Notes under the pieces: generated by a model | The model's input: the letters and a program-made list of their open reading frames with translations, nothing else | Databases searched by the model: none | What the model was told of the DNA's origin: nothing | Program-made: the position numbers and the translations under genes | Shown here: positions 44,701-64,000 of the stretch, piece by piece | Numbering within the stretch: the first letter of the stretch is position 1 | Layout of the letters: each line of letters begins with the position of its first letter | NCBI RefSeq assembly: GCF_001194135.2 | Contig: NC_068985.1 | Location: 34,299,723-34,363,722, forward strand | Length of the DNA: 64,000 nt | DNA from: Octopus bimaculoides | Lineage: Eukaryota | Direction: 5' to 3'

Positions 44701-46154
44701 TTGCTGAGACATTGCATCCTTTAAAACCTGCATGCTTCCTGAAATTTGCCAACACTATACCTGATATCCCCACCTCCATACACATGCACACATGTATAAC
44801 ATGACTTATACACTGTTTACTTTCCTGGCTTTTGTACATAATTCTATGTACTGTACATGCACCTTTGATGAGTTGTAGTACATCTGAGCACTATATACAA
44901 TAATTTCATTATTATTATTATTAATAATAACGTATACCAGAGATGATAATTCTATTAATATGGGGAGAATTAAAGAGCAGGAATTGGCTGTGTTTGATAA
45001 ACCTCAAAAGTTGTACAACATCATACCAACATCACACAGGCAAGATGTGGATTCTATACTGTGAAATGTATGCCCTCACTTTGTGCACAGTAATGCAATT
45101 TGATTATTGCATGTCAAGAAATCAGGGCCTTAGGTGCACAAAACTGCATTCAGACAGTAGAAACATAGACAATGATTAATTCAGTATCCTTAGGGTTTCA
45201 TTTGGCTTGTTAGATGTAGTAGATAAGTAGTTAAAATGATTAGTGCAAGAAGTAGAACTCGTGATTGAATTGTAGCTAGGGCTGGAATAGATTACAAGAA
45301 GTGCTAAAATTTTCTTCCCTTATTAAAAATGAAAAGAATTTGCAGCTTCATATGAAAGGTAGATGGCATGGTGCATTTGTGAGGAGTTGAAATGATGCAT
45401 GAAAGAATGATATGAATATTGGTTAGGAATGGAATTAACACCATTTGTTGGATGTGCAATACTAACATGTATCACTGACTGAGTTGAAGCTGAGAAATTG
45501 ATTTTTTTCAGTGGATGTATAATGAAAAGGCATTTTTGTTGGATTAAATGTGTGGTAGAGAGAAATGGATGTGGAATGAAATGATGGTATAATAAGGACA
45601 CACTGCAGAAAAACTATAAACTTTGAAGTATGACCTGAAAACTCTGAAGCTTATTAATACATTACTATAATGTACTATAGAACATATTCATAGTGCTTTT
45701 AGCTAACACTTTGTGTTACAATGATTGTAAACAAACTGTCTGTACAATATCTGTGCTGATATAAAAAGGGTGTACAACTGTGTGTGCATTTTTATTGTTT
45801 TTGAAGTCTTCAGCAGCAACTGTGTACCCCAGTATCTACTGACCATACAATATAGGACAGATAATTAGTGAAAAATTCTTCATAGCCCTTTATCTTTTTA
45901 ATATATTAATGCAGGGTCTTTTTAATATATCTTTTCAGAAATTACAGAAGACTTTTTGGTAACAACTATTTGTTGTACTGTAGGAAGTGTATTATTATTA
46001 TTAATAACTTTGAGGCTTCTTGCTTATAAATTCCACAAAATAAGAGGTTGGTATGTTTTACACATTATTAAGATTTGTTAACTACATTGAGATACATATT
46101 CTTCAAACTCTCCTGGTTAAATATATGTTGGAATTTGTGTATATATATATATAG

Positions 46155-46189
<35 letters not shown>

Positions 46190-49100: not shown

Positions 49101-50779
49101 AGTTTTCATAATTTTATCAATGCTGTACAATCTCACATATCCCAATGGTGGGGTCTTCCTCAAGGAACTGCTTAACTTTCTGGGTGAAATCAGCACTTCT
49201 CACCCTTTGTTTACTACAATTATGAGTTTCCCAAAGTAGCCATAGTGTTAATGTCAGAGTTACTATCCTCTGACTATTTCCTTACCCTCTGGACCATGTG
49301 CAGTGATAGCTTTAGGTAGTCAGCCTTGGTATTCATGCCAACACAGTATTCATGCCAGCACAGACTGCAGACACCACCACCTTCTTTTTCCACTCCTCAG
49401 GCCACTTGTATTCATTTAATCGATCTGGGTTTGTTATTTCTTTGAAGTCATACATAAACAATATTAGTTTACACCATAACTTTCAAAATAGTATTTGATT
49501 TTTGGTTTAAACAGAGACACTAATTTAAAATACACATGCTGTACTTCGATAAAACTTTGAAAATGTTAAATTCCATTGCATATCTTTACCATTGTCTCAA
49601 AATTATTAATCTTTATTAATAATCCAGTCTATAAAATATTCCCATTTTATATCTAATTTCTTGAATATGTGGAAAATAGTCAATATTGATAGTACACACC
49701 ATAATTTCAGAACAGTTTGAAACTTGAAAGAATGCAAGCAACCTTAAATAATATCAATCTCTAACATGTTTCTATTAATTGGTGTATGTGTATGAGTATG
49801 AATGTGTTTGTGATTCTAGCTCCTTAGTATTTACTTTGGTAGTATCAGTACACTACTAACATAGTTTTTTAAAAAAATCTTATTTATAACCATGTTATCT
49901 ATTCTTTGTATTAATTTCTTAAAGATATGGACACTGCTTGTATGAATGGTTCGGAGAAAACTGATGGCAAGCATATAAGCATTTCTTTAATAAATTACAT
50001 TCATTAAAGCACAAGTTTATTCTTTTATTGATTTCAGCCCAAGGCTATAGCCATTCTGAAATTCTGATATTATACAGTACACTATTTTTGTTTCTAAATA
50101 CACATTTATACATAAAATATACATTACAATATATTTCAATATTATTTTTATACTACTTTTGTGCAACAGTAAAATAGTTAAAACATACTCTCCAAGCAGA
50201 TAATTCTGCTCAAATATTATTTAATTTCTTGAATCAGTGGAAGATCATTATATTGTTGTTCAAAACATGTTGCATACATATATTTTTGTATAAAATCATC
50301 TTCATTTAGCATCCATTTTCCTTGCTGGCATGGGTTGGACAGTTTGACAAGAGCTGGCAAACTGAAGAGCTGCCCAGGCTCCAAATGTCTGTTTTGACAA
50401 GGCTTCCAAGGCTTGATGCACTTCTTAATGTCAACCACTTTCCAGAGTCTATTGGGTGCTATTCATGTAGCACTAGCACAAGCTCTTTTTACTTGGCACC
50501 AACACAAGTGCTTTTTACAACATCAGCACAGGTGCTTTTTATGTGGCATCAGCACTGGCACTAGCACCTGTGGAATCACCAAGTAGCTTGCAAGTCAAAG
50601 ATCTTTCAGCTGAGAGAGGGAGTAGAACCAAAAGAATTGGTTGTATCTGAGGCAAGAGGTAAGAGTGTGATAGAGGGACAGAGATATCTCTATCTCTACT
50701 AAGAGTAGATATTTGGCTACCCCAGTAGGACAAGAAGGAGAGGAAGGTGGGAAAGAGTTAAAGAGAAAGACTGAGACAC

Positions 50780-50835
<56 letters not shown>

Positions 50836-53800
50836 CACATGGTACAGTGAGAAGCAGTATAAATAGTAAAGAGGGGATAGAGTGGATGTTTCAAAAGAGT
50901 GTGACTGAAGCTGTTTAGAGATAACAAGTGGTGGTGAAAGGAATTGGAATGGTTGGGAAGGGTCTTATTGGAGAGAGAGAGAGAAAAAGAGAGAGAGAGA
51001 GTGCGCGCGCGTGTGTGTGTGTGTGTGTGGAGGGTCCTGTCGTGGAGTGTCAGGAAGATGGGTTTTGACAGAGGACAGGTTATATATGTGTCTGAGAGGG
51101 TCATGGCTGTATGTACAGATGGCTATGATTTTACTTAGTTTGATATGTCTTCTCAAGCACAGCAAATCACCAGATGTTTTGGTTCCTTGTCATCTCCTCT
51201 GTGAGGTCCAATACCTGAAGATAATTTTTCACCACTTTGTCCCATGTCTTTCTGGGTCTACCTCATCTACAGGTTTCTTCCACATTTAGAGACAGGCACT
51301 TCTTTGTGCAGCTCTTTTCCTCCATACACATCACTTGATCATACCAGTGCAATCTTCTCTCTTGCACACTATATCTAATGCTTTTTATGTCCAATTTTTC
51401 TCTTAAATCACTGATAATGGAATACAATTCTCGGGGTATGAATTCAAGAACTTCTGTAAAATGCATGTGATAAAGCATATTTTCACTCCTTCCTACTACC
51501 TGAGGTCAAATGGGCAGGTGAAAAGATTTGTGGACATATTCAGAAGAACGTTAAGGAAAGCTAGGAATGAGTCAAGTAATGACGAAGTTCTAATGAAATT
51601 CTTAAGGGTATGTAGAGTAACCACCCCCAATCATCATCATCATCATCATTTAGCATCTGTTGTCCATGCTGGCATAAGTTGGACGGTTTGACCGGGGCTG
51701 GCAAGCTGGAAGACTCCAGTTTGCACCAGACTCCAGTTTGATTTGACATGGTTTCTATGGCTGGATGCCCTTCCTAAGTCCAACCACTCTGAGAGTGTAA
51801 TGGGTACTTTTGTGTGCCACCAGCATGGGTGCCATTTGAATGATACTGGTAACTACCACAATTGCGATTTTGCTTTGCTTGATGGGTCTTCGTCTCAAGC
51901 ATGACATAATGCCAAAGATCTCAGTCATTGCCTCCATGAGACCCAACACTCAAAAGAAACTCAGCAACTTTGCCTTTGCGAGGCCTAACACCCGAAAGGA
52001 ACTCACCTCTGTGAGACCTAATGCTCAAAAGGAATTCAGCCACTTTGCCTTCATGAGGCCCAACATTTGAAGAGAACTCAGCCACTTTGCCTCCGTGGGG
52101 CCCAACGCTCAAAAGGAACTCAGCCTCTTTACCTCCATGAGGCCCAATGCTCAAAAAGTGCTCTTTACATGCCACTGGCACGGGTGCCAGTTACATGACA
52201 CCAGCATCAGTCACGATCATGATTTTACTTAGCTTGATGGGTCTTCTCAAGCACAGCATATCGCCAAAGGTTTCAGTAACTGGTCATTGCCTCTGTGAGG
52301 CTCAGAGTTTGAAGATCATGCTTCACCACCTTGTCCCATGCTTCCTTGGTCTACCTCTACCACAAGTTCCCTCCACAGTTAGATATCAACACACCTGACT
52401 TCGTCAATATGCATCACATGACCATACCAGTGCAGTCGTCTCTCTTGCACACCACATCTGATGCTTCTTATACCTAACTTTTCTCTCAAGATGCTTATAC
52501 TCTGTTGGACATGCACACTTACATTGCACATCTAATGAAACACACTGGCTTCATTTATTTCAAGCCTACGCATGTCAGCTGTCACAGCCTGTGTTTCCCT
52601 ACCATGTAACATAACTGTACGCACACAGGTATCATACAATCTGCCTTTCATACTGAGAGATAGGCCCTTTGTTGCCAGCAGAAGTAGGAGCTCTCTGAAC
52701 ATTGCCCAGCCTTATCTTATTCTCACAGATATGTTCTTGGAGCATCTACCTCCGTTACTAACTTGGTCACCTAGATAATGGAAGCTATCTAGTACCTCCA
52801 GCTTGATCACCTGGCAGTTGATGAAGTCTGTTTTCTGCACATTTTCAGTGTTTTTTGTACCTGTGCATCTTCCACATATAAAAGTTATTTTTCCTGTTAA
52901 CCTTTCTCTGATTTTGCTGCACCTTTTATGTGTTCAAATCTTACACTGGGTACATCTTATGGAGTTTCTACCTAACACCTTTTCTACAGATTGAGCAGGG
53001 CCATCTACCTGAAGGGATTTGTGATTTGTCTGCCTTCCTACTTACTAAAACTTTGGTTTTTACTAGGTTAACTCTAAGGCCCTTCGATTCTAGACCTTAT
53101 TTCCATACCTGAACTTCTCTAGTTCTGATAGGGATTCAACTATAAGAGCAAAGTCATCAGCATAGAGGAGCTCCCAGGGGAAACCTGTCTTAAATTCTTC
53201 TGTTATTGCCTGGAGGACTATGATGAACAAGAGGGGGATGAGCACCGATCCTTGGTGAACCCCTACTTGTACCCTGAATTCTTCATAGTATTCATTGCTC
53301 ATCTTCACCTTACTGGTAGCATCCCTGTACAAGGCTTGTAGAAATCTCACCAACCACTCATCCATCTCTAGTTTCTGCATTGACTACCAGATAAGAGATT
53401 GGGTGACCTTGTCAAAGGCTTTCTCCAAGTCAACAAAAGCCAAGTACAGAGGTTTGGTATTTCTAACCAAGTATAGAGGTTTGGTTAAGTATTTCTCCTG
53501 AAGTTGTTTTACCAGAAATATAACATCAATGGTGCTTCTACCCGGCACAAAGACAAACTGCATCTCATCTAAACTAACTCTCACCCTAATTTGTTATGCT
53601 ATGACTCTCTCCATAACTTCCATCACCTGATCCAACAATTTGATACCTCTGTAATTATTTCTATTTAAGGCATCATCTTTGCCTACGTAGCAGTTGACTA
53701 TGGTACTGATACACCTGGTATCTTCCACCAATGACAATTGGTGGAAGATACCAGGCTGCCATCTGACATGCCCATTGAAATCTTCAGCCTCAAAGATGAG

Positions 53801-56800
53801 ATCATTGTCATTCATCTTTGCGGTATCCTGCAGAAGAATATCATGAAAGTAGTCCCTCTGTTCATTTGGTAGGCCAACTTGTGGGGCAAGACTAGCCTGA
53901 GCTTAAGCACTCTATTGCACACTCTTACTACCACCATGACCATATCCACTCATTTCTCTGTAAGAAGTGTGCTTGCACCACCGACTCCATCACTGTTATC
54001 TTCCCAGAAGATTTTATACCTATGTGTCTTGCCTGTGAGGAACCTGGCTGAAGCTCCTCTCTGCCTTACCTCTTGGATACTGCATACATCAACATGGCTC
54101 CGTTCAAACATCTCAACAATCTCACTAGACCTACATTTCAATGTGCCTACATTGACAGTGCCAACTCTGAAAACTGGGAAAGGGACGTGGGAGGGAACAT
54201 GGGAAGGAGAGATGTTATTCAGCACCTGAAAAGAAGGTTTCCATGATCATTTGATAACAGACATTTCACATCAGTTGTTCTTGCTTTTAACATATCATCA
54301 TTCAAACATGTTAAAATTGTTACCCTTACTAGGGGTAATGTAAGCATAGTAAATATAAGTGTTATGAGCATTGTAAATATAAGTGTTACTGCTGCAAACA
54401 TAAATATAGATATACTAATGTTAAATTAAGTAAGTAAATGGGCAGCTGTTTGATTAGTCCATTATATATAGAGAGAGAAAGAGAAAGAGTGAGAGAGGGG
54501 GAGAGAGGGGAGAGAGGGAAAGAAGGTAGTAGGTGGTTTGGAAGGGAGGGAGGGACAGAGGTATGTAGGTCTTCTGGTGCAGAAGTGAGGCAGAGATATG
54601 TGGGAGTTTCCAGTATAAGGGAAGAGATTACCAGTATAAGAGAAGAGATTACTGGTACGAGAGAAGGGATTTCTGGTATTGGTAGTGGGGGCAAGAAAGG
54701 ATGGGCACATTGTGAACAAACAAAGGCTAGATTCACCACGCGAATTAGCAGCAAGAGGACAATAGTGAGGCAAAGAATGATAGAACACATGAGAATTATG
54801 TCAAGTATTTAAAGAGATATGATTCTAAAGTTATTAGAGAAAGTAATGAATTACAGGTTATGAAGTTATTCTAACTGAAGAATGTTAGCATGTTAGTAAT
54901 ACATGTTAAATGAATAAAAGAATGATGAAAAATTGAAAACTAGAGAAATTTCTTTACTTAGTGACTGGACATTTCACGTCGTGATATGATAGTGTCAGAT
55001 AGTAGGGCAAGATGTGAAGGTTTGGGATAAATCATGTGCAAAGGAGTTCTTTATATAATCTACAGCCAGAAGTGGTTAAATAAGTTGCTAGCTTCACCAG
55101 AAGAAAATCGAAATTGCAGCAACAGGACAATAGTGAGGCAAAAAATGATAGAACATATGAGAATTATGTCAAGTATTTAAAGAGATACGTTTCTAGAGTT
55201 ATAAGAGAAAGCCATGTACAAAGTCACGAAAGTCACCCACAGAGTTGATGTTCACGAGAAGAACAGAATCGATTTATGATAATTTATTGCCAGAGAAAAA
55301 AAGATGTAAAGGAAATATGAAAGGTTTAATGAAATATTTTGAAACAGGAGACAAAGTGCATTTTAAAACCTACAGAAATGGTAAAGAAGAATGGGAGGAT
55401 GGCCATGTAACCAAAAAAAAAAAAAAAAAAAANNNNNNNNNNAAAAAAAAAAAAAAAAAAGAAACTATCTAATTAAAGGACCATGTTAGGAACATAAGAG
55501 ACACATAAATCAGCTGAGGAATGGAGAAAGATTCCTATGGAAGTATTTTTTATGTATTTGATGTCCCAGTACCAAAAGAAATGGAGTTGGATAGAACCAG
55601 TGTGAGAAAACGGAAGCAGACTGAACACCTAGAGATAAGGCCCAAGTGAAAAAGAGACTAAAAAACAATAATAAATAAAATTTCTTTATTTCTTTGGAAC
55701 TGAAAATCTCAAAAGGAGAGATGTTGTGGTGAGAGTATGACACCCTCTGATGGAAATAGATGGGACCATTACATATAAATAGTAGCAGTCTGACATAATC
55801 AGCAGTTTGTAGTTTGGTCTTCAAAGTCCAGGTACAGGTTACAGTTCAAGTTAGTGAATTGGAAATATTGATTGTTGGCTTATGTGTTTATTACTGCTGC
55901 TGTTTTTATTTTGTATTGTTACAGTATATTCTTTATCTATCATCAACAATACCAACTGTACTATGATATTGGAGGTGTACGGATATAACAGTAAAATAAA
56001 CGTTTTCTAGCTCCTTTTCTGGTTGCCTGATATAGATCTTTGCCACTACTACTCTGCCCATCCTTCCAGGCTTGTTTCTTTGGTCTAATGGCCCTACGTA
56101 CTATGCTGTTCCATTATCCTATCATGTCACCTTAGGGCTGGAAGGGACTTTGCACGAGCCACAAATTTGGTCAGTAACCCTCATTAAGTTATTTATTCAA
56201 CCCCACCTCCAGTAAGTATAATTGATAGGGATTGTACATAACAAGATCTGAGAATGGTCTAAACTCGAATAGAAAGTTAATAACAATAATTTATATCAAA
56301 CTATTAATGTGTGTGTGTGTGACTATGAGACTATTAGTATCTTTTCTGGTAATATATTTAAATGTTATTTATATTTTTCTTTAATTCTTAAAGTCCTGGA
56401 TGGTGCTTATGATAATCTTTCAAAGAAACCTGAAGGTGAGCATATAGACATTTCCTAGATGCACTTCTATTCATTAACGCATATGTTAGCAAATACCTTG
56501 GCTCATTCCTTTTTTTGAGTAGAATGTACAGTGTAATAAAATATCTATGCATATATATATAAATAAAACTATCAAAATGTTAAATTTCCATTGCATGTAT
56601 AAGAAATGTCTTGTAAACTTTCTTATGTAACTCCATACTTTTGCACCCTTCACTGATAATCCAATTCATAAACATATTTTGTAAGTTTTATTTATACAAA
56701 TAAACAAAATAATTATATAACTAGTAATGAATTTACTAGACATTTGCTTGAAGATGAGACAAATAGTTTGGATGAGATTTTCAATGGGGAATATTATACA

Positions 56801-59800
56801 CTGAAATGAACTGTTTTTGTTGAGGTAACCACAATGAGTCCTGCTTTTGGATACCACTAGCATGAAAATAATCTTTAAAAATCTGTCACTAGACAGATTT
56901 TTGAACAGTTTCTCTTAATGGTAACATGATTATTTTAAAATATCAGTGAAATATGTTACAGAAATAGTGACATATGAAACACTAAGTAATATTAAATTTA
57001 GTCTATAGACAGCAAGGTGGTAGAATTATTAGCATGCCAGGCAAAATGCTTAGTGGCATTTCGTCCATCTTTACGGTCTGAGTTCAAATTCCACTGAGGT
57101 TGACTTTGCCTTTCATTCTCTTAAGATCGATAAAATAAGTACAAGTTGAACACTGGGGTCAATGCAATCAACTTCTCCCCTCTTTGAAATTGATGGTTCT
57201 GTGTCAAAATTTGAAATCAATATTAAATTTAGTCATACTATGTTCTGAGTTCAAATTTCTTTGAATGAAATTTCACCTTTGAACCTTCTGTAAATACCAC
57301 TGTTATATAATTTCTGTATTGAAATTAGCATTTTGCATGTGGAATATAATTTTTATTGATTTCTTCTTCTTCTTCTTCTTCTTCTTCTTCTTCTTCTTCT
57401 TCTTCTTCTTCTTCTTCTTCTTTTTCTTCTTTTTCTTCTTCTTCTTCTTCTTCTTCTTCTTCTTCTTCTTCTTCTTCTTCTTCTTCTTCTTCTTCTTCTT
57501 CTTCTTCTTCTTCTTCTTCTTCTTCTTCTTCTTCTTCTTCTTCTTCTTCCCCTTCTTCTTCTAATGTCTGCTTTCTATGCTGGCATGAGTTGGATGGTTT
57601 GACTGAGGACTAGTAAACCAGGAGGCTGCACCAGGCTTCAATCTGTTCTGGCGAAGTTTCTACAGCTGGATGCCCTTCTTAGTGCCAACCACTCCAAGAG
57701 TCTAGAGGGTGCTTTTTACGTGCCACCAGCATGGAGGCCAGTCAGGTGGCACTGGCATCGACCACACTCAAATGATGCTTTCTATATACCACAGGCACAG
57801 TTGCCAGTCAGGCGGCACTGGCATCGGCCACATTCAAATGCTGCTTTTTACATGCCACCGGCACGGATGCCAGTCAGGTGGTGCTGGCATTGGCCACAAC
57901 AATGATTTCCTCTTTGCTTACTTATATCAAATGAATTTATTAGGTAATACTATTCTTTATTTAAATACATCAATACGAAGATGAAGAACTTATACTTTAT
58001 GTTCAGTTTGATGGATTTCAACATAAAAATATTTAATACATTCTCTTCAAGCTATAAATATGTCCCTCTTTATCTAATGTTTTGAAGCTGTGGATGATCA
58101 TTATATTGAAGTTAGTGAACTCCAAAACATGTGCCTACAACTCCCTGGTAAGTATAATCAATATTGATAGCACACAACATAATCCCAAAATAGTATAAAC
58201 TTGAACAGAAAGCTAATGACTACACTTTATAACAATCTAAATATATTCTATCATTTTGTGTATGTATGTGTGTGTGCATGTGCATTCGCAACATACTAGC
58301 AACATATTTTAAATGTTATTTATAGTCACATTATTTATACTTTTATAAAATTTCTTGAAAACAAAGATGGTGCTTATTTCTAAGAAACTTGATTGTTAGC
58401 ACATAGGCAATTCATTAATAAAATTATAGTCCTTAAAGCAAGAGTTAACAAATATCTTAGCTTATCCTTTCTTTGAGTAGAACATACAGCTTAATAACAT
58501 ACATATGTTTTTAATTAGAAAAGTTTAAAAATGTGAAAATCCCATTGCAAATATAAAGAACTTGACTTCTTACACATATTAATCCATATTAATAATCCAG
58601 TGCATACATTTTTCATAATTTGCCATATTAAGTGTATACAGTGCTCAGGTGCACTACAACTTGTCAAAAGTGTGCATAAAGCATATGCAATATTGTACAA
58701 ATGTCTGGAAAGTGAACAGTGTATGAGTCAGATACATGTTTGCATGTGTATGGAGGGGAGAAAATCAGGTGTAGTGTTGGCGAATCTCAGGGAGCACGGA
58801 AGTTTTGAAGGATGCAGTGCTCCGACAACTAACAACTGATGCCAGCAGTTTGTTCCATACTTCAGCAACTCTTAGCATGGAAAACTGTTTCCAAAAGTCA
58901 TGGGAGCTGTGCTGTTTTCTGACTTTGTAAACATGACCATGGGTATTAGACAAGTGGAATTTGAAAAGGTACTCAGAGTTATTGTTAGTAAGATGGTTAA
59001 TAATTTTATGGGCGTCTGCCAAGTCAGCTGCCAGATGTCGGAGTTTCAATGTATCCATACCCAGGGAAGTAAGGTGTTCAGAATATGGCAAATGCCCGAT
59101 GGAGGGTATTCTCTTGGTTGCACGTCGCTGAACGGTTTCCAGACGATTAATATCCTGGGCAAGATAGGGGTTCCAAACCAGAGACACAAATGATATGCCA
59201 AATCTATCATAATTGATCTTTCTGTTTTTTCATAAGAAATAAATTTATGTTTCTCAATACATCTATGAGAAGATGAAGAGCTTATACTTTATATTCAGTT
59301 TGGCTGTATTTCAAATATATTTTCTTTCTCGATACAGGTTTATATAGAGATGTTTATATACAAAATATACATTATAATATATTTTTTCTACTTTCTGTGC
59401 AATATTGAAACACTTCAAATATCCTAACAATAAATACACCCATTTAATATTAAATTTCTTTTAGTTTTTGAAGATGAACATGCTGAAGATAGCGAGCCTA
59501 AATATGTATGCATGAAACAACCCAGTAAGTATGAATTAATATTGGAAGTACACAGCATGCCTTCAGAATAGTGCAAAACTTAAATAGAATGCTAACACTG
59601 ACTTTTTTCTGTTGATGTGTGTATGTGTGTGTGCACATGTATGCGATTATTTCAGTGTGTCTTTAATATTTATTCTGGTAGTATTAGCACACTTCTAACA
59701 TATCTTAAATATTATTTACAGCTATGTTATTTATTTTCCTTTATACTTCTTAAAGACTTGGATGCTGTTTATGCTAACATTCCAAAGAAACCTGATGGTA

Positions 59801-60548
59801 AGTATTTAAATGTATTGCAGGACAAGTTAGTAAAAAATTTGGCTCATTCTTTCTTTGTTGGTAGGATTGCAATTTAAACTTTGAAAATGATAGAATTCCA
59901 TTGAATATATGATAAACGTCCTGCAGGCATTCATTTGTACCTCCAATATTTTACCATTTTATGACTCCAGTTTGTAAAACTATTTTCTGTAAGTTTCAGT
60001 TGTACAACAAATAAACCAAATAATGATATAAGTAGTACTGCATTCACGAATGTTTTGTGTTCATTTTTCAATCTCTTGAAGATCTCGATATGCACTTCTT
60101 TTATGTAATTTCTATAAAAAAAAATTAGCATTTTGTGGATAGAAAAGAATTTTGAGTATTTTACTTTATGGAGGAACCTTCTCTCCAAACACTAAATTTG
60201 ATATGCCATATCTATCAAAACTGATCTTTCTGTTTTTTCATAAGAAATGAATTTATGAGGCAATATTTTTCTGTTTCTCAATACATCTATGAGAAGAGGA
60301 AGAGCTTATACTTTACATTCAGTTTGACTGTATTTCAAATATATTTTCTTTCTCAATACATGTTTATATAGAGATGCTTATATACAAAATATACATTATA
60401 AGATATCTTTACTACTTTCCGTGCAATATTGAAACACTTAAAATATCCTAACAATAAATACACCCATTTTATATTAAATTTCTTTTAGTTTTTGAAGATG
60501 AACATGTTGGAGATAGTGAGCCCAAATATGTATGCATGAAACAACCCA
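5756..60548 (+). CDS. Multi-exon Ig-superfamily type I membrane receptor (7 Ig-like domains + TM + repeated Tyr-motif cytoplasmic mini-exons); incomplete at both ends
   Basis: Exons with AG acceptors and GT/GC donors, all phase 1-1, join into one open frame. Ig Cys/Trp patterns, then a hydrophobic span followed by basic residues, then Tyr motifs. Architecture is nephrin/CD22/Siglec-like, but no orthologue can be named. Confidence 0.85.
6707..6990 (-). mobile_element. RTE 3'UTR/tail fragment
   Basis: (CAT)n tail plus the ggatgcccttcctaatgc block, next to (TA)n. Confidence 0.7.
7690..8500 (-). mobile_element. Penelope-like element: Asn-rich linker and GIY-YIG remnant
   Basis: KGILYRCKVTSEGQDNYCIGSIEKYIKRIANHENTFKN follows an N-rich linker, with frameshifts. 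Confidence 0.7.
10115..10480 (+). mobile_element. RLE-type non-LTR retrotransposon (R4/Dong-like) endonuclease end
   Basis: EHNMPDIVVWDRGAKVCTIIEVSCFTD..KEKEDIY..IIIGALG shows the PD-(D/E)xK RLE pattern. Confidence 0.75.
11900..12278 (+). mobile_element. Mariner transposase C-terminus and right end
   Basis: LGWEKIPHPPYSPNLAPSDYHLFRSLQNHL...GIKKLVNRWKEVVDNQGKYIDD*, ending at a TA. Confidence 0.85.
12659..12979 (+). CDS. Ig-like domain exon 2 (C2/nephrin-like)
   Basis: tatttcag|TT...T|gtaagc, 321 nt. LPKSVTIKAISDTVLVENQNKSYECLVTDTNLEFSVFWLITW...SKLTLHLNKKFKDLQCVAYF...LDMPIK. Confidence 0.9.
13608..13668 (+). ncRNA. Minimal type I hammerhead ribozyme motif
   Basis: CTGATGA (13619), gccta/tagg stem II, GAAA (13643), actag-t-ctagt stem III, GUC triplet (13655-13657). 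Stem I is only partly paired. Confidence 0.5.
13824..14035 (-). mobile_element. RTE 3'UTR/tail fragment
   Basis: (CAT)n tail next to (TA)n, plus the ggatgcccttcctaa block. Confidence 0.65.
15120..15600 (-). mobile_element. RTE ORF2 fragment
   Basis: KFNITKTKILVS...CKLWTHKRHSG...LEVVDNFCYLGDLISSEG. Confidence 0.75.
16200..17120 (+). mobile_element. RTE ORF2 fragment
   Basis: GRWPCSIYRKGVGRNSIRCTQCKLWIHKR; HISETWAMTVEDIRRLERNEASML. Confidence 0.8.
17170..18440 (+). mobile_element. RLE-type (R4/Dong-like) LINE remnant spanning an N gap
   Basis: KFGLEKCAKATLKRGK...YKYLG...KEYYRRVRSILKTEL; after the gap, QKISLLGTAHILCKTL. Confidence 0.7.
18500..19400. mobile_element. Cluster of about 5 decayed tRNA-SINE copies
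   Basis: Repeated gagttcaaattcc..ctttcatcct..gtcaat..aagtaccagt blocks separated by (ATT)n. The first copy is inverted. Confidence 0.65.
19642..19896 (+). CDS. Ig-like domain exon 3
   Basis: catag|AT...T|gtgagt, 255 nt. TPMKKITLNVLTAKVCAGTPMKFQCSWKGGNPPASVTL...IVKCLGSHITANVSYEKNITVC; CxxxGGNPPA is a nephrin-type motif. Confidence 0.9.
20270..21130. repeat. Internal tandem duplications upstream of the Helitron coding remnant
   Basis: aatagct.tataact block at about 20466, 20622 and 20883; gaagtgattttgtt.gtatggctacttgg block at about 20737 and 21009. Confidence 0.8.
21150..22810 (+). mobile_element. Helitron: PIF1-like helicase C-terminus and 3' end
   Basis: MFLRNLD..GHCN...LIPRIP...FTRKQFPVKPAFAL..NKAQGQTF...SHGQLYVALSRV. 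Terminal hairpin and CTAG|T at 22771-22810. Confidence 0.88.
23050..24206 (+). mobile_element. DNA transposon remnant, Chapaev3 (CMC)-like transposase C-half
   Basis: KIILPLLCIKLGIMKQFVKTL; LGTNMRINLHYLHCHFDKFLENSGDISNEQGECFYQ. Ends ...GTAGTG. Family assigned from recalled motifs. Confidence 0.55.
24765..25120 (-). mobile_element. tRNA-derived SINE immediately upstream of Ig exon 4
   Basis: ccaaggtgccatgcagtggcactgaaccc..tgtggttgggaagc is a reverse tRNA-like head, with an internal microsatellite. Confidence 0.6.
25168..25422 (+). CDS. Ig-like domain exon 4
   Basis: tttacag|CT...T|gtaagt, 255 nt. LPERIKIKSDEPFLEGQEGNLHCGTINGYSEKYNYRWNRN...LNNKVYTCYVSS...HWVNVE. Confidence 0.9.
26690..28260 (-). 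mobile_element. RTE LINE fragments (APE start and RT)
   Basis: LGIDEWLVRVMQVMY...VHQESVLISVL...WEILYADD. Confidence 0.75.
28638..30161 (-). mobile_element. Helitron (mostly in an N gap) with both termini
   Basis: Minus-strand A|TCTATATATATAAAA start with a (CTGT)n tract, FSHGQLYVGCSRVG helicase motif VI, and hairpin CCCGGGCAACGCCGGG followed by CTAG|T. Confidence 0.75.
32703..32951 (+). CDS. Ig-like domain exon 5
   Basis: tttatag|AT...T|gtatga, 249 nt. VPDITASEDVTLIENQASIVNCSAKGNPIPEV...VFCVANAKSTKHGNLTSRKKINILLK. Confidence 0.9.
33788..34080 (+). mobile_element. Penelope-type GIY-YIG remnant
   Basis: NVVYSI...MYIGETSRSIAE*...LYQHAKDHH...LRQIRECILI. Confidence 0.65.
34100..35185 (+). mobile_element. 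Ty3/Gypsy gag-protease-RT remnant
   Basis: EDYITYAGRVNRECEKFKLDELTPDMFRCLIF, then a degraded VKMQL protease region. Confidence 0.6.
35419..35673 (+). CDS. Ig-like domain exon 6 (GC donor)
   Basis: ttaaag|AT CCT CCT CAG..., ends CCAG|gcaagt, 255 nt. PPQVNINISEGMYNATIINCTASDGNP...SNTGTWECHVSN...YKIP. Confidence 0.88.
37712..38017 (+). CDS. Ig-like domain exon 7 (membrane-proximal)
   Basis: caccag|TG...GAAG|gtaagt, 306 nt. KPIFSS...GETVIFKQCFYSHPKSDVKWQKN...SLKIEDIKGNDFGIYVLTVENPIGKEVTIFTLRSE. Confidence 0.9.
38790..39320 (+). mobile_element. RTE 3'UTR/tail fragment
   Basis: ggttggcgttaggaagggcatccagctgtagaaac block and a (GAT)n tail, preceded by (TA)n. Confidence 0.7.
40511..41985 (+). mobile_element. 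5'-truncated RTE LINE
   Basis: LLYADDLALIAES...FRYLGDQVSSG through to the 3'UTR and (GAT)n tail. Confidence 0.85.
43866..44930 (+). mobile_element. CR1-clade LINE 3' part
   Basis: GVPQESVFGPLL...HADDIKLY...LQSDLD...DLGITVSSDLHW, ending in an (ATT)n tail. Confidence 0.85.
45939..46046 (+). CDS. Transmembrane exon
   Basis: cttttcag|AA, in phase with exon 7. ITEDFLVTTICCTVGSVLLLLITLRLLAYKFHKIR is a hydrophobic span followed by basic stop-transfer residues. Donor is AG|gttggt (phase 1) or 4 nt later TG|gtatgt (phase 2). Confidence 0.8.
46790..47575 (+). mobile_element. Chapaev3-like transposon left end and N-terminal Cys-rich region
   Basis: TAA|CACTGGAC start; PDNFCC...YFGCKVGDQDKRWVPPICC..C...PMV..NHVSDYYFC...SVPH. 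Confidence 0.55.
47930..48720 (+). mobile_element. pogo/Tigger-like DDE transposase remnant
   Basis: YNVDETELFWK...IPKNTTSLLQ...ISESWDEVKCITLNGA. Confidence 0.65.
49925..49966 (+). CDS. Cytoplasmic mini-exon A1 (Tyr lost, GC donor; may be inactive)
   Basis: ttcttaaag|AT...G|gcaagc, 42 nt, DMDTACMNGSEKTD. Homologous to A2/A3 with TAT changed to TGT. Confidence 0.5.
50238..50293 (+). pseudogene. Mini-exon B1, 5' part (donor missing; pseudo-exon or alternative terminal exon)
   Basis: gaatcag|TG GAA GAT CAT TAT ATT GTT GTT CAA AAC ATG reads VEDHYIVVQNMLHTYIFV*. Aligns to B2, with a deletion of about 9 nt; an RTE tail follows. Confidence 0.55.
51631..54230 (-). mobile_element. Decayed RTE LINE (APE, RT, 3'UTR)
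   Basis: FRVGTVNVGTLKCRSSEIVEMFERSHVDVCSIQE; GVHQGSVLIPLLFIIVL...LLYADD; (CAT)n tail at 51631. Confidence 0.85.
55722..55990 (+). repeat. 3' LTR of the Gypsy element
   Basis: Polypurine tract aaaaggagaga (55711-55721), then TGTTGT...ATAACA. No 5' LTR was found. Confidence 0.6.
56198..56222 (+). pseudogene. Orphan 3' end and donor of a B-type mini-exon
   Basis: caaccccacctcca|gtaagtataatt resembles the B2/B3 ends (caactccctg|gtaagtata, caaccca|gtaagtatg) and is followed by the B-to-A intron homolog and A2. Confidence 0.45.
56394..56435 (+). CDS. Cytoplasmic mini-exon A2 (YDNL)
   Basis: ttcttaaag|TC...GAAG|gtgagc, 42 nt, LDGAYDNLSKKPE. Confidence 0.75.
57010..57225 (+). mobile_element. tRNA-derived SINE
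   Basis: gagttcaaattccactgaggttgactttgcctttcattc..gatcgataaaataagtac. Confidence 0.65.
57360..57561. repeat. (CTT)n microsatellite, about 200 bp
   Basis: Direct reading of the sequence. Confidence 0.95.
57562..57900 (-). mobile_element. RTE 3'UTR fragment
   Basis: ctacagctggatgcccttc block plus gccagtcagg.ggcactggc repeats. Confidence 0.7.
58088..58147 (+). CDS. Cytoplasmic mini-exon B2 (YIEV)
   Basis: ttttgaag|CT...CCTG|gtaagt, 60 nt, VDDHYIEVSELQNMCLQLP. Confidence 0.7.
58361..58394 (+). pseudogene. Dead A-type mini-exon copy
   Basis: gatggtgcttat...aagaaacttgatt|gttagc aligns to A2. The acceptor AG is mutated (gaaa) and there is an 8-nt deletion; an alternative AG gives an immediate TAA. 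Confidence 0.65.
58765..59190 (-). mobile_element. CR1-clade LINE 3' end inserted between mini-exon units
   Basis: VWNPYLAQDINRLETVQRRATKRIP...LRHLAADL; same family as 43866-44930. Confidence 0.85.
59465..59524 (+). CDS. Cytoplasmic mini-exon B3 (YVCM)
   Basis: ttcttttag|TT...CCCA|gtaagt, 60 nt, FEDEHAEDSEPKYVCMKQP. An in-frame alternative acceptor lies at 59473. Confidence 0.75.
59756..59797 (+). CDS. Cytoplasmic mini-exon A3 (YANI)
   Basis: cttcttaaag|AC...GATG|gtaagt, 42 nt, LDAVYANIPKKPD. Confidence 0.78.
60489..60548 (+). CDS. Cytoplasmic mini-exon B4 (YVCM)
   Basis: ttcttttag|TT...CCCA|gtaagt, 60 nt, FEDEHVGDSEPKYVCMKQP; 56/60 nt identical to B3. Confidence 0.75.
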
Positions 60549-60959
60549 GTAAGTATGAATCAATATTGGAAGTACACAGCACGCCTTCAGAATAGTGCAA
60601 AACCTGAAAAGAATGCCAACACTAACGTTTTTCTATTGATGTGTGTATGTGAGAAGCCTTCTCTCCAAGCACTAACTTTGAAATGCCATATTAAGTAAAA
60701 TTAGACGTTCTTTCTCCTTATTTGTTCATACCAAATGAATTTATTAGACAATTCCTTTCCTTTTCTGAATACACCAATGAGAGGAGAGGAGGAAGAACTC
60801 ATACTGTACTCTGAGTTTGACAGGATTTCAAATAATTTTTTTTACCATTGAATATTTAGACATATAATACTGAAACGCCCTATGTAACCACCTTATTCTC
60901 ATACCCACTTGTTGGCTCTTGCTCTAGATGTTGAATGAGGTGGGAGAGACTGGTTTATT

Positions 60960-63510
60960 GTAATTCACTGAATAAACTCTGTACCAAAGCTCTATGCAAG
61001 CTGGCAAGCATTTTTGCAGATCTTCGTTTCAGGTGATGACAAAATTCCCACAACTACCTTACCGCAACCACTCCCAAGTACTTAATCTCAGGGCCACTAC
61101 CATCAATGTTAGCACAATGAAAGGACAGAGTGGGGAGATTGCTGAAATGTTAGAGCGATGCCATGTTGATGTATATGGTGTACAAGAAGTTAGACGGAAG
61201 GGAGTCTCAGCTAGATTCCTCATGGGTAAGAGACAGAGATTCAAATTCTTCTGGGTCAGCAGGAATGATGGAGTGGGTGGAGTAGGCAGACTGTTAACAG
61301 AAAAGTGGGTAGATAAAGTAATTGAAGTAGTCAGAGTATGTGAAAAGATAATTAAGATGAGACTTATCATAGGTAAATTAACAGTTACATTTATCTCTGC
61401 TTATGCCCCTCAGTCTGGGCTGACTGATGAGCAGAAGGACCAATTCTATGAGTTCCTTTTGCAGACTACCTCAACAACAAATGACAGAGACTTTGTTATT
61501 GTGGCTGGTGACCTCAATGGACATGTTGGAGAGTACCCCCATGGATTACAGGGATTGCATGGGGGCTATGCCTTTGGACCTAGAAATGAGGAGGGAACAA
61601 GACTGCTGGAGTTCTGTGATGCAAATGATCTCATGATCTGCAACACTAACTTCAAAATACCAGCCAGCCACCTAATCACTTATCAGTCCGGTGAGCACAT
61701 AAGCCAGATTGACTACCTCCTCACCAGGAAACGAGATAGATGGATGCTTAAAAATGCAACGTCTTTCCCAGGTGAAGAGTGTACAACCCAACATAGGTTA
61801 CTAGTTAGTGACTTCTGAATTAAAGCTAGAAAGACACAGAGAAATAAACCAATCTGGAAAAAAAGATTATGAAAGCTCAAAGACCCAGCAAACAAACAAA
61901 AGTTTAGAGATTTGCTAATGGAAGCTTCTCACGAAAGAGAAGAAGAGTTGGTGACATATAGCTTAGAGGACAACTGGAAGTTCTTGAGGGGTAATCTGTT
62001 GATGGCTACAGATGAAATCTGTGTTTGGTGCAGAGTCCCAGCTAGACCAAGGGTGACATGGTGGTGGAGCAAGGAGGTTGACAGTGTTATAAAGGCAAAG
62101 AGACAGGCCTGGAAATTATGGGAAAATGGTGGAAGCAGGTAGCCAAAAGAGGCGCTAGACATCAGGTAAACATAGCAAAAGGAGTAGCTGAAGGTAAGAG
62201 ATTTGCAAATGTCCTACAACGTGAGGATCAGAGGTGTGAGGTGTTCAGGATTGCAAAGCAGTGTGTCAGAGAAAATAGAGATGTGGTAGGGGAGAAATGT
62301 GTGTGAATAGATAATGGTATGCTTGCACTTAGTGACTCAGAGAAGAAAGGTGCATGGAAGTGTCATTATGAAAGGTTACTAATTGTGGAAAATGAATGGG
62401 AGAAGGAGAGTTCACCAAATATCGAACCAGTTGAGGGACCAGTCGTCACAGTTGAAAGCAGCATAATAGATAAAGCAGTTAAGGACATGAAGACAGGGAA
62501 AGGCCCTGAGCCATCAGGAATTACTGCTGGCTGAGATTATAAAAATTTCCGGTGGCATAGGATACAGCTTAGTCACTCGTATAGTTAATCAGGTTATTCA
62601 GGAAGGCACCATCCCCAACGATTGGTGTAGTAGAATTATAGTTAGCTGCTATAAGGGTAAAGGTGATGACTTAGATAGAAACAACTACAAAAGTATTAAA
62701 CTGGTAGACCAAGTCATGAAAGTTACTGAGAGGGTTATAGCTCAATTGATTAGAAATAGAATTAAACTAGATGAGATACTGTTTGGTTTTGTACCTGGGA
62801 AGAGTACCACAGATGACATCTTCCTAGTGAGACAGCTGCAGGAAAAGTACTTGGCCAAAAGTAAGCCATTGTACTCAGCCTTCACTGACCTGGAGAAGGC
62901 TTTCAACAGAGTTCCCCACTCTGTTATATGGTGGTCTCTAAGGAAGTTAGGAGTAGAGGAGTGACTTGTTAGAGCTATCCAAGCCATGTACAGTGGTGCT
63001 GTCAGTAAGATGAGAGTCGGCTATGAATACAGTGATGAATTTGGCATTCAGGTAGGGGTTCATCAGGGTTCGGTTCTCAGCTTGTTCTTATTTATTATAG
63101 TCCTCCAGGCCAGAACAGAGGAATTCAAAACTAGATTCCCATGGGAACTACTATATGCTGATGACCTTGCCCTTATTGCAGAATCTTTAGCAGAATTGGA
63201 GAAGAAATTCCAGGTATGAAAACAAAACCTGGAATCAAAGGTCCTTAAAGTTAACATAGCTAAGACAATAGTTGTTGTTAGTAAGAAAGAAGATAAAACT
63301 TTCTTTCTGTCAGGCAAATGGCCCTACTCAATAAGTAGGAAAGGAGTTAGAAGAAATTCCATTTGCTGCATTCAGTGTAAACTATGGACACATAAGAGAT
63401 GCAGTGGTATCACAGGTAGATTAACAGATAGAGTAGTCTTTGTATGTGGAAGATGTGCAGAAACAATAAGCACTAAGAGCACACAGGAATTAGATTCAAC
63501 AGAATATTGT
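60960..63510 (+). mobile_element. Near-complete decayed RTE LINE (APE + RT)
   Basis: APE ORF 60994-61818 (DVYGVQE, SAYAPQ, AGDLNGHVG, IDYLL, QHRLLVSDF); RT fragments FGFVPGKST, DLEKAFNRV, GVHQGSVLS, LLYADD. Confidence 0.9.
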
Positions 63511-64000
63511 CTACACTTTTTTTTAGGTGCACTTGCCATGTTTATCTGAAATAATAAACAAATATTTTCAAAAATGTTGAATAAACAAGAGGTTAGTTTC
63601 AAGTGTTTTCGTCAAGGGTGAAAAGTAAGGTAAACCAATATACCTTTTTAGCCAAGAATAAAATTAGTTCTAAAACCAAATTTATAAAATTAATACATTA
63701 TGCAGTTAACTAAATCAAAGGCTATAATAATCAGGAAAAACAGATTAATATTTATGCTTATAAAAAGATAAAAATAACAAGACAAAATTCATCTTTCCCT
63801 TTTCAGTTGACAATCCAGAAAGAAAATTAATTTGATGAAAAGAAACTAAATTATAAAAGTGATAGCTAAAGCAAGTGAGCTGGTAAACTCATGGAGAAAA
63901 TAGGGCTGATTTATTGTTGAATCAAACTTGAATTGCCAAAAAGAGTTAACAAAAACTAGAGGTAGTCGATAGCTTCCGCTATCTGGGCAACCAAGTTAGT

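What the first reader, a model, noticed from the sequence alone, without database searches (positions are those of the whole stretch)
58088..60548. The tyrosine motif moved position between B-exon paralogs
B2 and B3/B4 are colinear 60-nt exons (VDDHYIEVSELQNMCLQLP versus FEDEHAEDSEPKYVCMKQP). B2 has Tyr early (YIEV). B3/B4 lost that Tyr (TAT to CAT) but gained one eight codons later (AAC to TAT), creating YVCM, a YxxM. Each copy keeps exactly one Tyr motif, but of a different SH2 class, which suggests functional diversification rather than drift. B3 and B4 differ at 4 of 60 nt (2 synonymous, 2 non-synonymous), a recent duplication.
Basis: partly seen in the sequence, partly recalled or inferred. 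Interest (0 to 1): 0.7.

Follow-up and report, generated by a model that had tools for sequence, protein, structure and literature searches.

The report
Octopus receptor tail exons: complementary tyrosine loss
The three 60-base segments are real duplicated mini-exons in the cytoplasmic tail of an uncharacterised octopus multi-immunoglobulin receptor, and their tyrosine did not move: the ancestral exon had two tyrosines and each copy type lost a different one.

Summary
The sequence facts are confirmed. B2 (58088-58147), B3 (59465-59524) and B4 (60489-60548) are colinear 60-nt, phase-1/phase-1 exons with AG/GTAAGT borders. Codon 5 is TAT in B2 and CAT in B3/B4; codon 13 is AAC in B2 and TAT in B3/B4. 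B3 and B4 differ at 4 nt, 2 synonymous and 2 not.

The window is octopus DNA. The exons belong to the tail of a multi-Ig, single-pass receptor orthologous to O. sinensis LOC115212119, whose gene models splice in B2-type and B3-type exons.

The claimed polarity is wrong. Of 22 B modules in family proteins, 13 carry both tyrosines, 7 only the second, and 2 (B2, B2') only the first. All 16 modules from paralogous genes keep the second tyrosine. So B2/B2' lost Tyr13 once, B3 lost Tyr5 once, and the duplicates inherited those states.

"One Tyr per copy" therefore rests on two events. The gene's last B exon keeps both tyrosines, and exon A1 has none.

Constraint on the tail is detectable but weak (pN/pS about 0.2; three O. 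sinensis B3 exons identical against 7-9% intron divergence). B3 versus B4 diverge as fast as their introns. Functional diversification is possible but unproven.

The parts
58088..58147 (+). B2 mini-exon (60 nt, phase 1/1): xVDDHYIEVSELQNMCLQLP. It keeps Tyr5 (YIEV). The former Tyr13 is now Asn (AAC).
   Evidence: The O. sinensis orthologue at L001 37310 is included in model XP_036359229.1. There are 3/60 differences between species, two of them replacements (N13D, Q17E), both in the half that lost its Tyr.
58361..58396 (+). Pseudo-A exon behind B2 (psiA2). The acceptor AG is lost (gaaaac), there is an internal deletion, and the TAT relic survives.
   Evidence: Read by alignment to A3. The same decay is present in O. 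sinensis. It is absent from the gene models.
58640..59178 (-). Retroelement fragment (reverse-transcriptase C-terminal-like ORF) inserted between the B2 and B3 cassettes.
   Evidence: ORF 58768-59229(-). It is 78% identical to another copy at L001 17339-17884. There is no Pfam hit.
59465..59524 (+). B3 mini-exon: xFEDEHAEDSEPKYVCMKQP. Tyr5 is lost (CAT) and Tyr13 is kept (YVCM).
   Evidence: O. sinensis has three identical B3-type exons in its models, at L001 38873, 41998 and 47045.
59756..59797 (+). A3 mini-exon (42 nt, phase 1/1): xLDAVYANIPKKPD, with a YxN motif. It lies 231 nt downstream of B3, forming a B-A cassette.
   Evidence: The O. sinensis orthologue at L001 47341-47382 is in the gene model.
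60489..60548 (+). B4 mini-exon: xFEDEHVGDSEPKYVCMKQP. It is a window-lineage duplicate of B3, and its partner A exon is deleted (homology breaks at about 60651).
60684..60846 (+). Intron segment orthologous to the sequence just upstream of the O. sinensis B2' exon. In the window it runs into a LINE.
   Evidence: 90.8% identity to L001 37875-38036. B2' sits at L001 38173.
60908..63490 (+). LINE retrotransposon (APE endonuclease plus reverse transcriptase) interrupting the array.
   Evidence: Pfam Exo_endo_phos_2 and RVT_1. Copies elsewhere are listed.
56394..56435 (+). A mini-exon xLDGAYDNLSKKPE (YDNL). Its partner B exon is a TE-truncated relic ending at 56212.
   Evidence: 0/42 differences from O. 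sinensis. The relic is shared with O. sinensis.
49925..49966 (+). A1 mini-exon xMDTACMNGSEKTD. Tyr is replaced by Cys, the donor is GC, and the exon is in the orthologous gene models.
50237..50290 (+). B1 pseudo-exon of B2 type (VEDHYIVV..QNM), with an internal 9-nt deletion and truncated by a transposable-element insertion.
   Evidence: The same state is found in O. sinensis.
45939..46046 (+). Transmembrane exon: EITEDFLVTTICCTVGSVLLLLITLRLLAYKFHKIR (boundaries approximate).
   Evidence: tblastn with P0005 and P0017.
5756..38017 (+). Seven Ig-domain exons of the same gene, at about 5756-6061, 12655-12984, 19640-19897, 25170-25423, 32703-32951, 35418-35676 and 37713-38017.
   Evidence: Pfam I-set, Ig_3 and Ig_2.

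Best explanation
The interval covers part of the cytoplasmic-tail exon array of a type-I, multi-Ig-domain receptor on the + strand of an octopus genome. The gene is the orthologue of O. sinensis LOC115212119 and belongs to an uncharacterised, Octopus-restricted gene cluster.

The tail is built from tandemly duplicated B-A cassettes. Each cassette is a 60-nt B exon, about 200-250 nt of intron, and a 42-nt A exon. All are phase 1/1, so any exon can be gained, lost or skipped without breaking the frame.

The ancestral B exon carried two tyrosines eight residues apart: xVE(D/N)QY-A-E-(I/V)-S-x3-Y-(L/V)-x-(M/L). The A exon carried a YxN tyrosine.

Within this gene, one B lineage (B1, B2, B2') lost the second tyrosine (Y>N). 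Another (B3, later duplicated to B3/B4 here and to three copies in O. sinensis) lost the first (Y>H). The last B exon still has both. The B2 versus B3/B4 contrast is therefore complementary loss from a two-site module followed by exon duplication, not relocation of a motif.

Shown here: exon architecture, orthology, inclusion in gene models, the polarity of the changes, and the birth-and-death dynamics of the array.

Inferred: after receptor engagement the tyrosines are phosphorylated and act as SH2 docking sites (YxE[IV] Src/SHP-type, Y[VL]xM p85-type, YxN Grb2-type). On that reading B2 and B3/B4 each supply only one of the two ancestral docking specificities, and exon copy number sets their dosage.
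For: - Ig domains by Pfam. The TM exon and seven Ig exons are mapped with the orthologous proteins.
- Orthologous locus L001 is 90-95% identical to the window. The exons of XP_036359229.1 map onto it, and B2, B2', three B3 copies, A3 and the later exons are all spliced in. The O. vulgaris CAI9722591.1 model has the same tail.
- The 60/42-nt phase-1 architecture is also found in a paralogous O. bimaculoides gene, with TAT at both Tyr positions.
- Module census: 13 Y/Y, 7 x/Y, 2 Y/x. From paralogous genes: 12 Y/Y, 4 x/Y, 0 Y/x.
- Unit tree with paralogue outgroups: B2+B2' 64%, B3 clade 96%, B3 clade plus the dual-Tyr last exon 76%, w_B3+w_B4 100%.
- The frameshifted pseudo-exon at L001 51175 still reads ..YFEITEPKYLCMKH.
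- Copies that lost their splice sites (B2'b and B2'c, donor GT>GA; psiA2, no acceptor AG) are exactly the ones missing from the models.
- Constraint. Tail exons between species have pN 0.029 against pS 0.150; nonsynonymous changes are at most 6 of 12 where 81% are expected, P=0.014. The O. sinensis B3a exon is 0/60 different from B3b/c while the introns differ by 7-9%, P=0.004-0.01.
Against: - There is no transcript evidence for the window's own species. The supporting gene models are computational and may not be independent of each other.
- Counting all nucleotides, tail exons diverge about as fast as introns (0-7% against about 5%).
- B3 versus B4: exon 6.7%, intron 5.7%.
- Many array members are dead (psiB0, B1, psiB56, psiA2, B2'b/c), so neutral decay is clearly at work in this array.
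- A1 is in the models without any Tyr.
- Orthology among B3-type copies is blurred. Species-diagnostic sites cluster at the exon edges, which suggests gene conversion, and local gene order differs between the two assemblies.
- The SH2 assignments are consensus matches only.
Confidence: 0.8

Rival explanations
1. Neutral birth-and-death. The array duplicates and decays without selection on individual copies. The loss of Tyr13 in B2 and of Tyr5 in B3 are first steps of degeneration with no signalling consequence, and 'one Tyr each' is an accident of two events propagated by duplication.
For: - At least six pseudo-exons in the array, four of them shared by both species.
- In three of four older cassettes only one of the two exons survives.
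- B3 and B4 exons diverge as fast as their introns.
- The former Tyr13 codon of B2 keeps changing: AAC here, GAT in O. sinensis.
- The dead first site of B3 also lost its +3 Ile (one search compared).
- Pseudo-exons retain their Tyr codons as well, so retention is not evidence of selection at this divergence.
Against: - Tail exons have pN/pS of about 0.2, P=0.014.
- The three O. sinensis B3 exons are identical despite 7-9% intron divergence.
- The five replacements at whole codons among live B2-type and B3-type copies all lie in the half that had already lost its Tyr. A sixth, at the junction codon after B3/B4, does not, so this pattern is suggestive only.
- The surviving exons keep consensus splice sites.
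Confidence: 0.35
2. Within the B3 lineage the early Tyr was lost and a new Tyr was created eight codons later (AAC>TAT), an adaptive switch of SH2 class.
For: Only the pairwise B2 versus B3 comparison.
Against: - Tyr13 (TAT) is present in every B module of paralogous genes (16/16), in this gene's last B exon, and in pseudo-exon L001 51175.
- The rooted unit tree places the Y13>N change on the B2/B2' stem.
Confidence: 0.03
3. The segments are not exons at all, only intronic or repeat sequence that happens to stay open.
For: A 19-codon open frame is not rare in 68% A+T DNA (my estimate is roughly 0.2 per frame). No RNA data were available for this species.
Against: - Orthologous exons are spliced into O. 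sinensis and O. vulgaris models.
- Length, phase and splice context are identical in paralogous genes.
- Copies without splice sites are excluded from the models.
- pN is lower than pS.
Confidence: 0.05

Closest known systems
Octopus sinensis LOC115212119 (XP_036359229.1/XP_036359230.1) and O. vulgaris CAI9722591.1, all annotated 'uncharacterized protein'
   Same: Orthologous locus at 90-95% nucleotide identity. It has the same Ig, TM and tail exons, and the same B2-type (YIEV) and B3-type (HAED...YVCM) exons.
   Different: O. sinensis has three identical B3 copies plus a live B2' exon, and its B3 copies precede A3. The window has B3-A3-B4, with a LINE where B2' is expected. The residue at the former Tyr13 of B2 is Asp there and Asn here.
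ITAM (YxxL/I-x6-8-YxxL/I), the dual-tyrosine immunoreceptor module
   Same: The ancestral B exon is a compact two-tyrosine module preceded by acidic residues, repeated several times in an Ig-receptor tail.
   Different: The spacer is 4 residues rather than 6-8, and the second +3 residue is often Met. No canonical ITAM is found in any family tail. Only the B-to-A junction gives a relaxed pattern, YVCMKQP(N/D)LDAVYANI.
YxxM / YxN co-stimulatory-type motifs (CD28 YMNM, DAP10 YINM, Shc YVNV); from general knowledge
   Same: B3/B4 carry YVCM (YxxM, p85-type). The A exons carry YDNL, YANI and YVNV (YxN, Grb2-type).
   Different: Here the two motif types sit on separate, tandemly duplicated mini-exons. 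Binding is untested and there is no sequence homology to those proteins.
Vertebrate multi-Ig receptors whose tails are encoded by several short exons and vary by exon skipping (e.g. PECAM-1/CD31, CD22, FCRL); from general knowledge
   Same: A multi-Ig ectodomain, a single TM segment, and tyrosine motifs carried on short cassette exons. The O. bimaculoides paralogue has two models differing by an in-frame 68-aa block equal to four mini-exons.
   Different: The octopus tail exons are recent tandem duplicates of one 34-codon cassette with ongoing birth and death. There is no ITIM consensus, and the family was found only in Octopus.
Duplication-degeneration-complementation (subfunctionalisation), applied to exons
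   Same: A two-site ancestor and duplicates with complementary losses, both retained in the gene models.
   Different: Retention through selection is not demonstrated. An intact two-site exon also persists in the same gene, so neither single-site copy is needed to preserve the ancestral functions.

Membership tests
Immunoglobulin-superfamily type-I receptor | Ig-fold ectodomain domains | tested here: met
   Pfam I-set 62 bits, Ig_3 54 bits and Ig_2 36 bits on the spliced window protein. Seven Ig exons are mapped.
Immunoglobulin-superfamily type-I receptor | Single hydrophobic transmembrane segment followed by a basic stop-transfer sequence and a cytoplasmic tail | tested here: met
   Exon 45939-46046 reads ...TTICCTVGSVLLLLITLRLLAYKFHKIR. 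This was read from the sequence; no TM predictor was run.
ITAM | YxxL/I-x(6-8)-YxxL/I | tested here: not met
   A regular-expression scan of the window tail and seven family tails gave 0 canonical hits. The B module has a 4-residue spacer.
ITIM / ITSM | [SIVL]xYxx[IVL] or TxYxx[VI] | tested here: not met
   0 hits in the window tail and in the O. sinensis orthologue. There are two ITIM-pattern hits in one paralogue only.
p85 PI3K SH2 docking site | YxxM sequence pattern | tested here: met
   YVCM in B3 and B4.
p85 PI3K SH2 docking site | Phosphorylation of the Tyr and binding of a p85 SH2 domain | not testable with these tools
   This needs phosphopeptide binding assays or phosphoproteomics.
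Grb2-type SH2 docking site | YxN sequence pattern | tested here: met
   YDNL (56394-56435) and YANI (59756-59797). Binding was not tested.
Src/SHP-type SH2 docking site | pY-hydrophobic/acidic-E-[IV] pattern (consensus recalled from the literature) | tested here: inconclusive
   YIEV in B2 fits the remembered consensus. No motif library was available to score it.
Cassette (frame-neutral) exons subject to alternative splicing | Same intron phase on both sides and a length divisible by three | tested here: met
   B exons are 60 nt and A exons 42 nt, all phase 1/1, in the window, L001 and L003.
Cassette (frame-neutral) exons subject to alternative splicing | Observed alternative inclusion | tested here: inconclusive
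   Two O. bimaculoides paralogue models differ by an in-frame 68-aa block (B+A+A+B). No read-level data exist for this gene.
Subfunctionalised duplicates (DDC) | Ancestor with both sub-functions and complementary losses in the duplicates | tested here: met
   Dual-Tyr ancestor and reciprocal losses.
Subfunctionalised duplicates (DDC) | Both duplicates maintained by selection because each is needed | tested here: inconclusive
   pN/pS is about 0.2 for pooled tail exons, but B3 versus B4 looks neutral and an intact dual-Tyr exon persists in the gene.

The most novel reading that the evidence does not exclude
The B-A mini-exon cassette is an Octopus-specific, rapidly evolving signalling-module array. 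Tandem exon duplication, complementary loss of individual docking tyrosines (and of whole exons within cassettes) and exon skipping would together tune which SH2 effectors a lineage-specific, fast-evolving multi-Ig (possibly immune-type) receptor family recruits, and in what dosage. That would be an invertebrate, exon-level counterpart of vertebrate ITAM/ITIM multiplicity. The B-to-A junction (Y[VL]xM/L-x8-YxN[IV]) would be a non-canonical ITAM-like unit, which B2 has lost and B3-A3 retains.
Probability: 0.2. Interest if true: 0.6.

Novelty: new variant of a known kind. Interest (0 to 1): 0.35.

Why it matters
The specific claim, a tyrosine motif that relocates and switches SH2 class, would have been a neat case of motif turnover. 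The evidence shows the more ordinary process of complementary loss from a two-site ancestor.

The locus remains useful. It is an undescribed, Octopus-restricted cluster of multi-Ig receptors whose tails are assembled from frame-neutral tyrosine-motif mini-exons. Live exons and dated pseudo-exons sit side by side. That makes it a tractable natural system for studying how signalling tails gain, lose and partition docking sites, and a candidate immune-type receptor family in cephalopods, whose receptor repertoires are poorly known.

Tried and rejected
- ITAM, ITIM and ITSM membership. Pattern scans found no canonical ITAM, ITIM or ITSM in the window tail or its orthologue; the only ITIM-pattern matches were two in one paralogue, P0001.
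- Relatives outside Octopus. Two database searches, one with the full spliced protein and one tail-only with modules from three genes, returned only Octopus proteins. The tail architecture could not be traced deeper.
- Naming the source species. The window is not O. sinensis (90-95% identity). It does not lie in the two O. bimaculoides loci fetched, L002 and L003, which are paralogues at about 80% identity with one 93% patch. The look-up of P0004 found nothing. The source is probably O. bimaculoides or a close relative, because one Ig exon is 100% identical in protein to XP_014777113.1. This is unproven.
- One-to-one orthology of B3-type copies between species. It was not resolvable. Cross-species intron distances are all 9-10%, species-diagnostic sites cluster at the exon edges, and gene order differs.
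- 'Replacements avoid the live half-motif'. The count is 5 of 5 at whole codons, but a sixth change at the junction codon breaks the pattern, so I treat it as suggestive only.
- Structured RNAs and tRNAs in 45000-64000: none found.
- Literature. Searches by gene identifiers and by topic found no description of this family.
Full report
**What the window is.** The window is AT-rich eukaryotic DNA (about 32% G+C). It is full of LINE/SINE fragments and microsatellites and contains seven assembly gaps. On the + strand it carries a multi-exon gene. Seven Ig-domain exons lie between about 5.7 and 38 kb, and a transmembrane exon lies at about 45.9 kb. Pfam finds I-set, Ig_3 and Ig_2 domains. From about 49.5 kb to the end of the window there is an array of very short exons.

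The best database relatives are all 'uncharacterized' Octopus proteins. One of them, O. sinensis LOC115212119 (P0005), has a tail containing the window's short exons almost word for word. Its genomic locus, L001, aligns with the window at 90-95% identity in colinear blocks. The window is therefore the orthologous locus of a related octopus species. One Ig exon is 100% identical in protein to an O. bimaculoides model, whereas O. sinensis differs at 5 of 83 residues. The two O. bimaculoides loci I fetched are paralogues, not this locus. The species remains unproven.

**Check of the observation.** B2 (58088-58147), B3 (59465-59524) and B4 (60489-60548) are each exactly 60 nt. Each is bounded by AG and GTAAGT and has 2 leading and 1 trailing base, so each is phase 1 on both sides. 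They read xVDDHYIEVSELQNMCLQLP, xFEDEHAEDSEPKYVCMKQP and xFEDEHVGDSEPKYVCMKQP.

B3 and B4 differ at four positions, two synonymous and two replacements. B2/B3 homology is secured by the flanking introns (E=1e-12; E=1.6e-8) and by the shared architecture, not by the exons alone, which are 57% identical.

**Anatomy of the array.** The repeat unit is a cassette of a 60-nt B exon, a 180-250 nt intron, and a 42-nt A exon (DxDxAYxN[IVL]xKKP). In window order the cassettes are:
- psiB0 (internally deleted) with A1, which has Tyr>Cys and a GC donor.
- B1, of B2 type and truncated by a transposable element.
- psiB56 (truncated by a transposable element) with A56 (YDNL).
- B2 with psiA2, which has lost its acceptor and is deleted internally.
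- A retroelement fragment on the minus strand.
- B3 with A3 (YANI).
- B4, whose A exon is deleted.
- The upstream region of a B2'-type exon, running into a LINE that fills the rest of the window.

The four older pseudo-exons are in the same state in O. sinensis, so they decayed before the species split.

The O. sinensis gene continues beyond the window's reach. It has a live B2' exon (VEHQYFEVCEHQNICPEPP) and two B2' copies whose GT donor is mutated. It has three identical B3 exons and a frameshifted B pseudo-exon. It then has another A exon (YVNV), a final B exon AVEDYYVEVSELKYVCMKHP, and two C-terminal exons. The copies with broken splice sites are exactly those missing from the gene models.

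**Polarity of the tyrosine changes.** A profile of B modules run over all family proteins found 22 modules. Thirteen have both tyrosines. Seven have only the second, with the first replaced by C, C, D, N or H. Only two, B2 and B2', have only the first. Among the 16 modules from paralogous genes the second tyrosine is never missing.

At the DNA level, a paralogous O. bimaculoides gene (L003) has B exons with the same 60-nt phase-1 architecture, the same acceptor context, and TAT at both positions. A neighbour-joining tree of exon-plus-flank units with these paralogue exons as outgroup gives:
- a B2+B2' clade (64% bootstrap);
- a B3 clade (96%);
- the dual-Tyr last exon joined to the B3 clade (76%);
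- window B3+B4 as sisters (100%).

The most parsimonious history is a two-tyrosine ancestor, one loss of Tyr13 on the B2/B2' stem (TAT>AAT/AAC), and one loss of Tyr5 on the B3 stem (TAT>CAT). After that the states were inherited by duplication. In B3 the +3 Ile of the first site is also gone (YAEI>HAED). In B2 the former Tyr13 codon is still changing, AAC here and GAT in O. sinensis.

The tyrosine did not move, and YVCM was not created from AAC. 'Each copy keeps exactly one' is true of B2, B3 and B4. It rests on two events, is contradicted by the last B exon (both sites) and by A1 (no Tyr), and is equally true of dead copies.

**Selection or drift.**
- Between the window and O. sinensis, introns differ at about 5% of aligned sites. 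Tail exons differ at 0-7% (A1 2/42, A56 0/42, B2 3/60, A3 3/42), and B3 at 6/60 against its best match.
- Splitting the sites gives pN=0.029 and pS=0.150 for the pooled tail exons. At most 6 of 12 changes are replacements where 81% are expected (binomial P=0.014).
- In O. sinensis the B3a exon is identical to B3b and B3c (0/60), while their introns differ by 7-9% (P=0.004-0.01). This could be purifying selection or exon-centred gene conversion.
- Seven of eleven species-diagnostic sites cluster at the exon edges, which favours some conversion.
- Window B3 versus B4 shows no constraint: exon 6.7%, intron 5.7%.
- All five replacements at complete codons among live B2-type and B3-type copies fall in the half that had already lost its tyrosine. 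A sixth change, at the junction codon after B3/B4 (G>A), does not. I treat this pattern only as a hint.

Overall the tail is under some purifying selection. Nothing here shows that the complementary losses were selected.

**Likely function.** The tail has no canonical ITAM, ITIM or ITSM. The motifs fit textbook SH2 consensus classes. The A exons carry YxN (Grb2-type). The second B site is Y[VL]xM/L (p85-type when M). The first B site is YxE[IV] (Src/SHP-type). These consensus classes are from my knowledge of the field, not from a tool. The B-to-A junction gives Y..M-x8-Y..I, an ITAM-like spacing with non-canonical residues. In the window the junction residue would be Asn, because B3 ends in A.

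The working model is a receptor whose phosphorylated tail recruits several SH2 effectors. Exon copy number and exon skipping would set their stoichiometry. Two models of an O. bimaculoides paralogue differ by an in-frame block of four mini-exons. On this model B2 contributes only the first specificity and B3/B4 only the second. All of this is inference.

**Novelty.** No paper in the searchable library mentions these genes or describes such a family in cephalopods. The tail architecture was found only in Octopus proteins. Ig-superfamily receptors with tyrosine-motif tails on short cassette exons are a well-known kind. The tandem 34-codon cassette array with a short-spaced dual-tyrosine module is a new variant of it.

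The finding as stated, motif relocation as evidence of diversification, is largely explained by ordinary complementary loss. I score it as moderately low in interest.

Noticed in passing
window 45939-46046: The transmembrane exon encodes an Arg inside the hydrophobic segment (LLLLITLRLLAY), where O. sinensis and O. vulgaris have Gly (LLLITLGLVAY). It also has one extra Leu codon. A charged TM residue is typical of receptors that pair with signalling adaptors, but this could equally be a lineage-specific or assembly variant.
   Followed up: no
window 35418-35676: This Ig exon differs from its O. sinensis orthologue more than its flanking introns do (19/259 = 7.3% against 4.8%), with about 11.5 replacement changes. 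Part of it is nearly identical in protein to an O. bimaculoides paralogue (P0004). This suggests diversifying selection or gene conversion among cluster members.
   Followed up: partly
window 32568-32960 vs L003 27225-27623: The Ig exon here is 100% identical in protein to O. bimaculoides LOC106874055, and the surrounding DNA is 93% identical. Neighbouring exons of the same two loci are only about 80% identical. This mosaic pattern is consistent with gene conversion between paralogues.
   Followed up: partly
window 60908-64000: A LINE (APE endonuclease plus RT) sits where the B2' exon is expected. Inside or after it, 63494-63948 is unique sequence 94.8% identical to L001 43004-43461, which in O. 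sinensis lies between B3b and B2'c. The local order therefore differs between the two assemblies. Whether this is a rearrangement or a misassembly is unresolved.
   Followed up: partly
window 49925-49968: Exon A1 has Cys (TGT) where the other A exons have Tyr, and it uses a GC rather than a GT donor, in both species. It is nevertheless included in the O. sinensis and O. vulgaris gene models.
   Followed up: partly
window 59456-59476 and 60480-60500: In B3 and B4 the acceptor region reads cttttag|TTTTTGAAG|ATG. A second AG lies 9 nt downstream and would give an in-frame 51-nt version of the exon. O. sinensis has cttgaag|TTGTGGAAG|ATG.
   Followed up: no
window 34753-34808; L001 10001-10057: The first exon of O. 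sinensis isoform X1 (MQLDTGSNITIINQKSWKY) looks like a retroelement aspartic-protease motif (DTGS) and has a counterpart in the window's intron. The N-terminus of that gene model is probably spurious. The O. vulgaris model, 887 aa with a signal peptide, is the better guide.
   Followed up: no
window 57361-57562 and 57737-57898: The intron upstream of B2 contains a (TTC)67 microsatellite and a 66-nt tandem repeat of 2.5 copies. The 66-nt repeat is related to sequences elsewhere in the window (about 1115-1225), so it is probably part of a dispersed element.
   Followed up: no
window 449-896, 6625-6634, 15889-16050, 17535-18311, 28965-29799, 33034-33425, 55433-55442: There are seven runs of N (assembly gaps), one of them inside the tail-exon array. 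Copy number and order in this repetitive region should be treated with caution.
   Followed up: no
P0007 tail (O. vulgaris/sinensis paralogue): Another family member has a different repeated tail module, five or more copies of DV(N/E)(E/D)LYAKVNKP(S/R)(K/M)Q(A/T)D with a YAKV motif. Tail-module turnover is therefore a family-wide trait.
   Followed up: no
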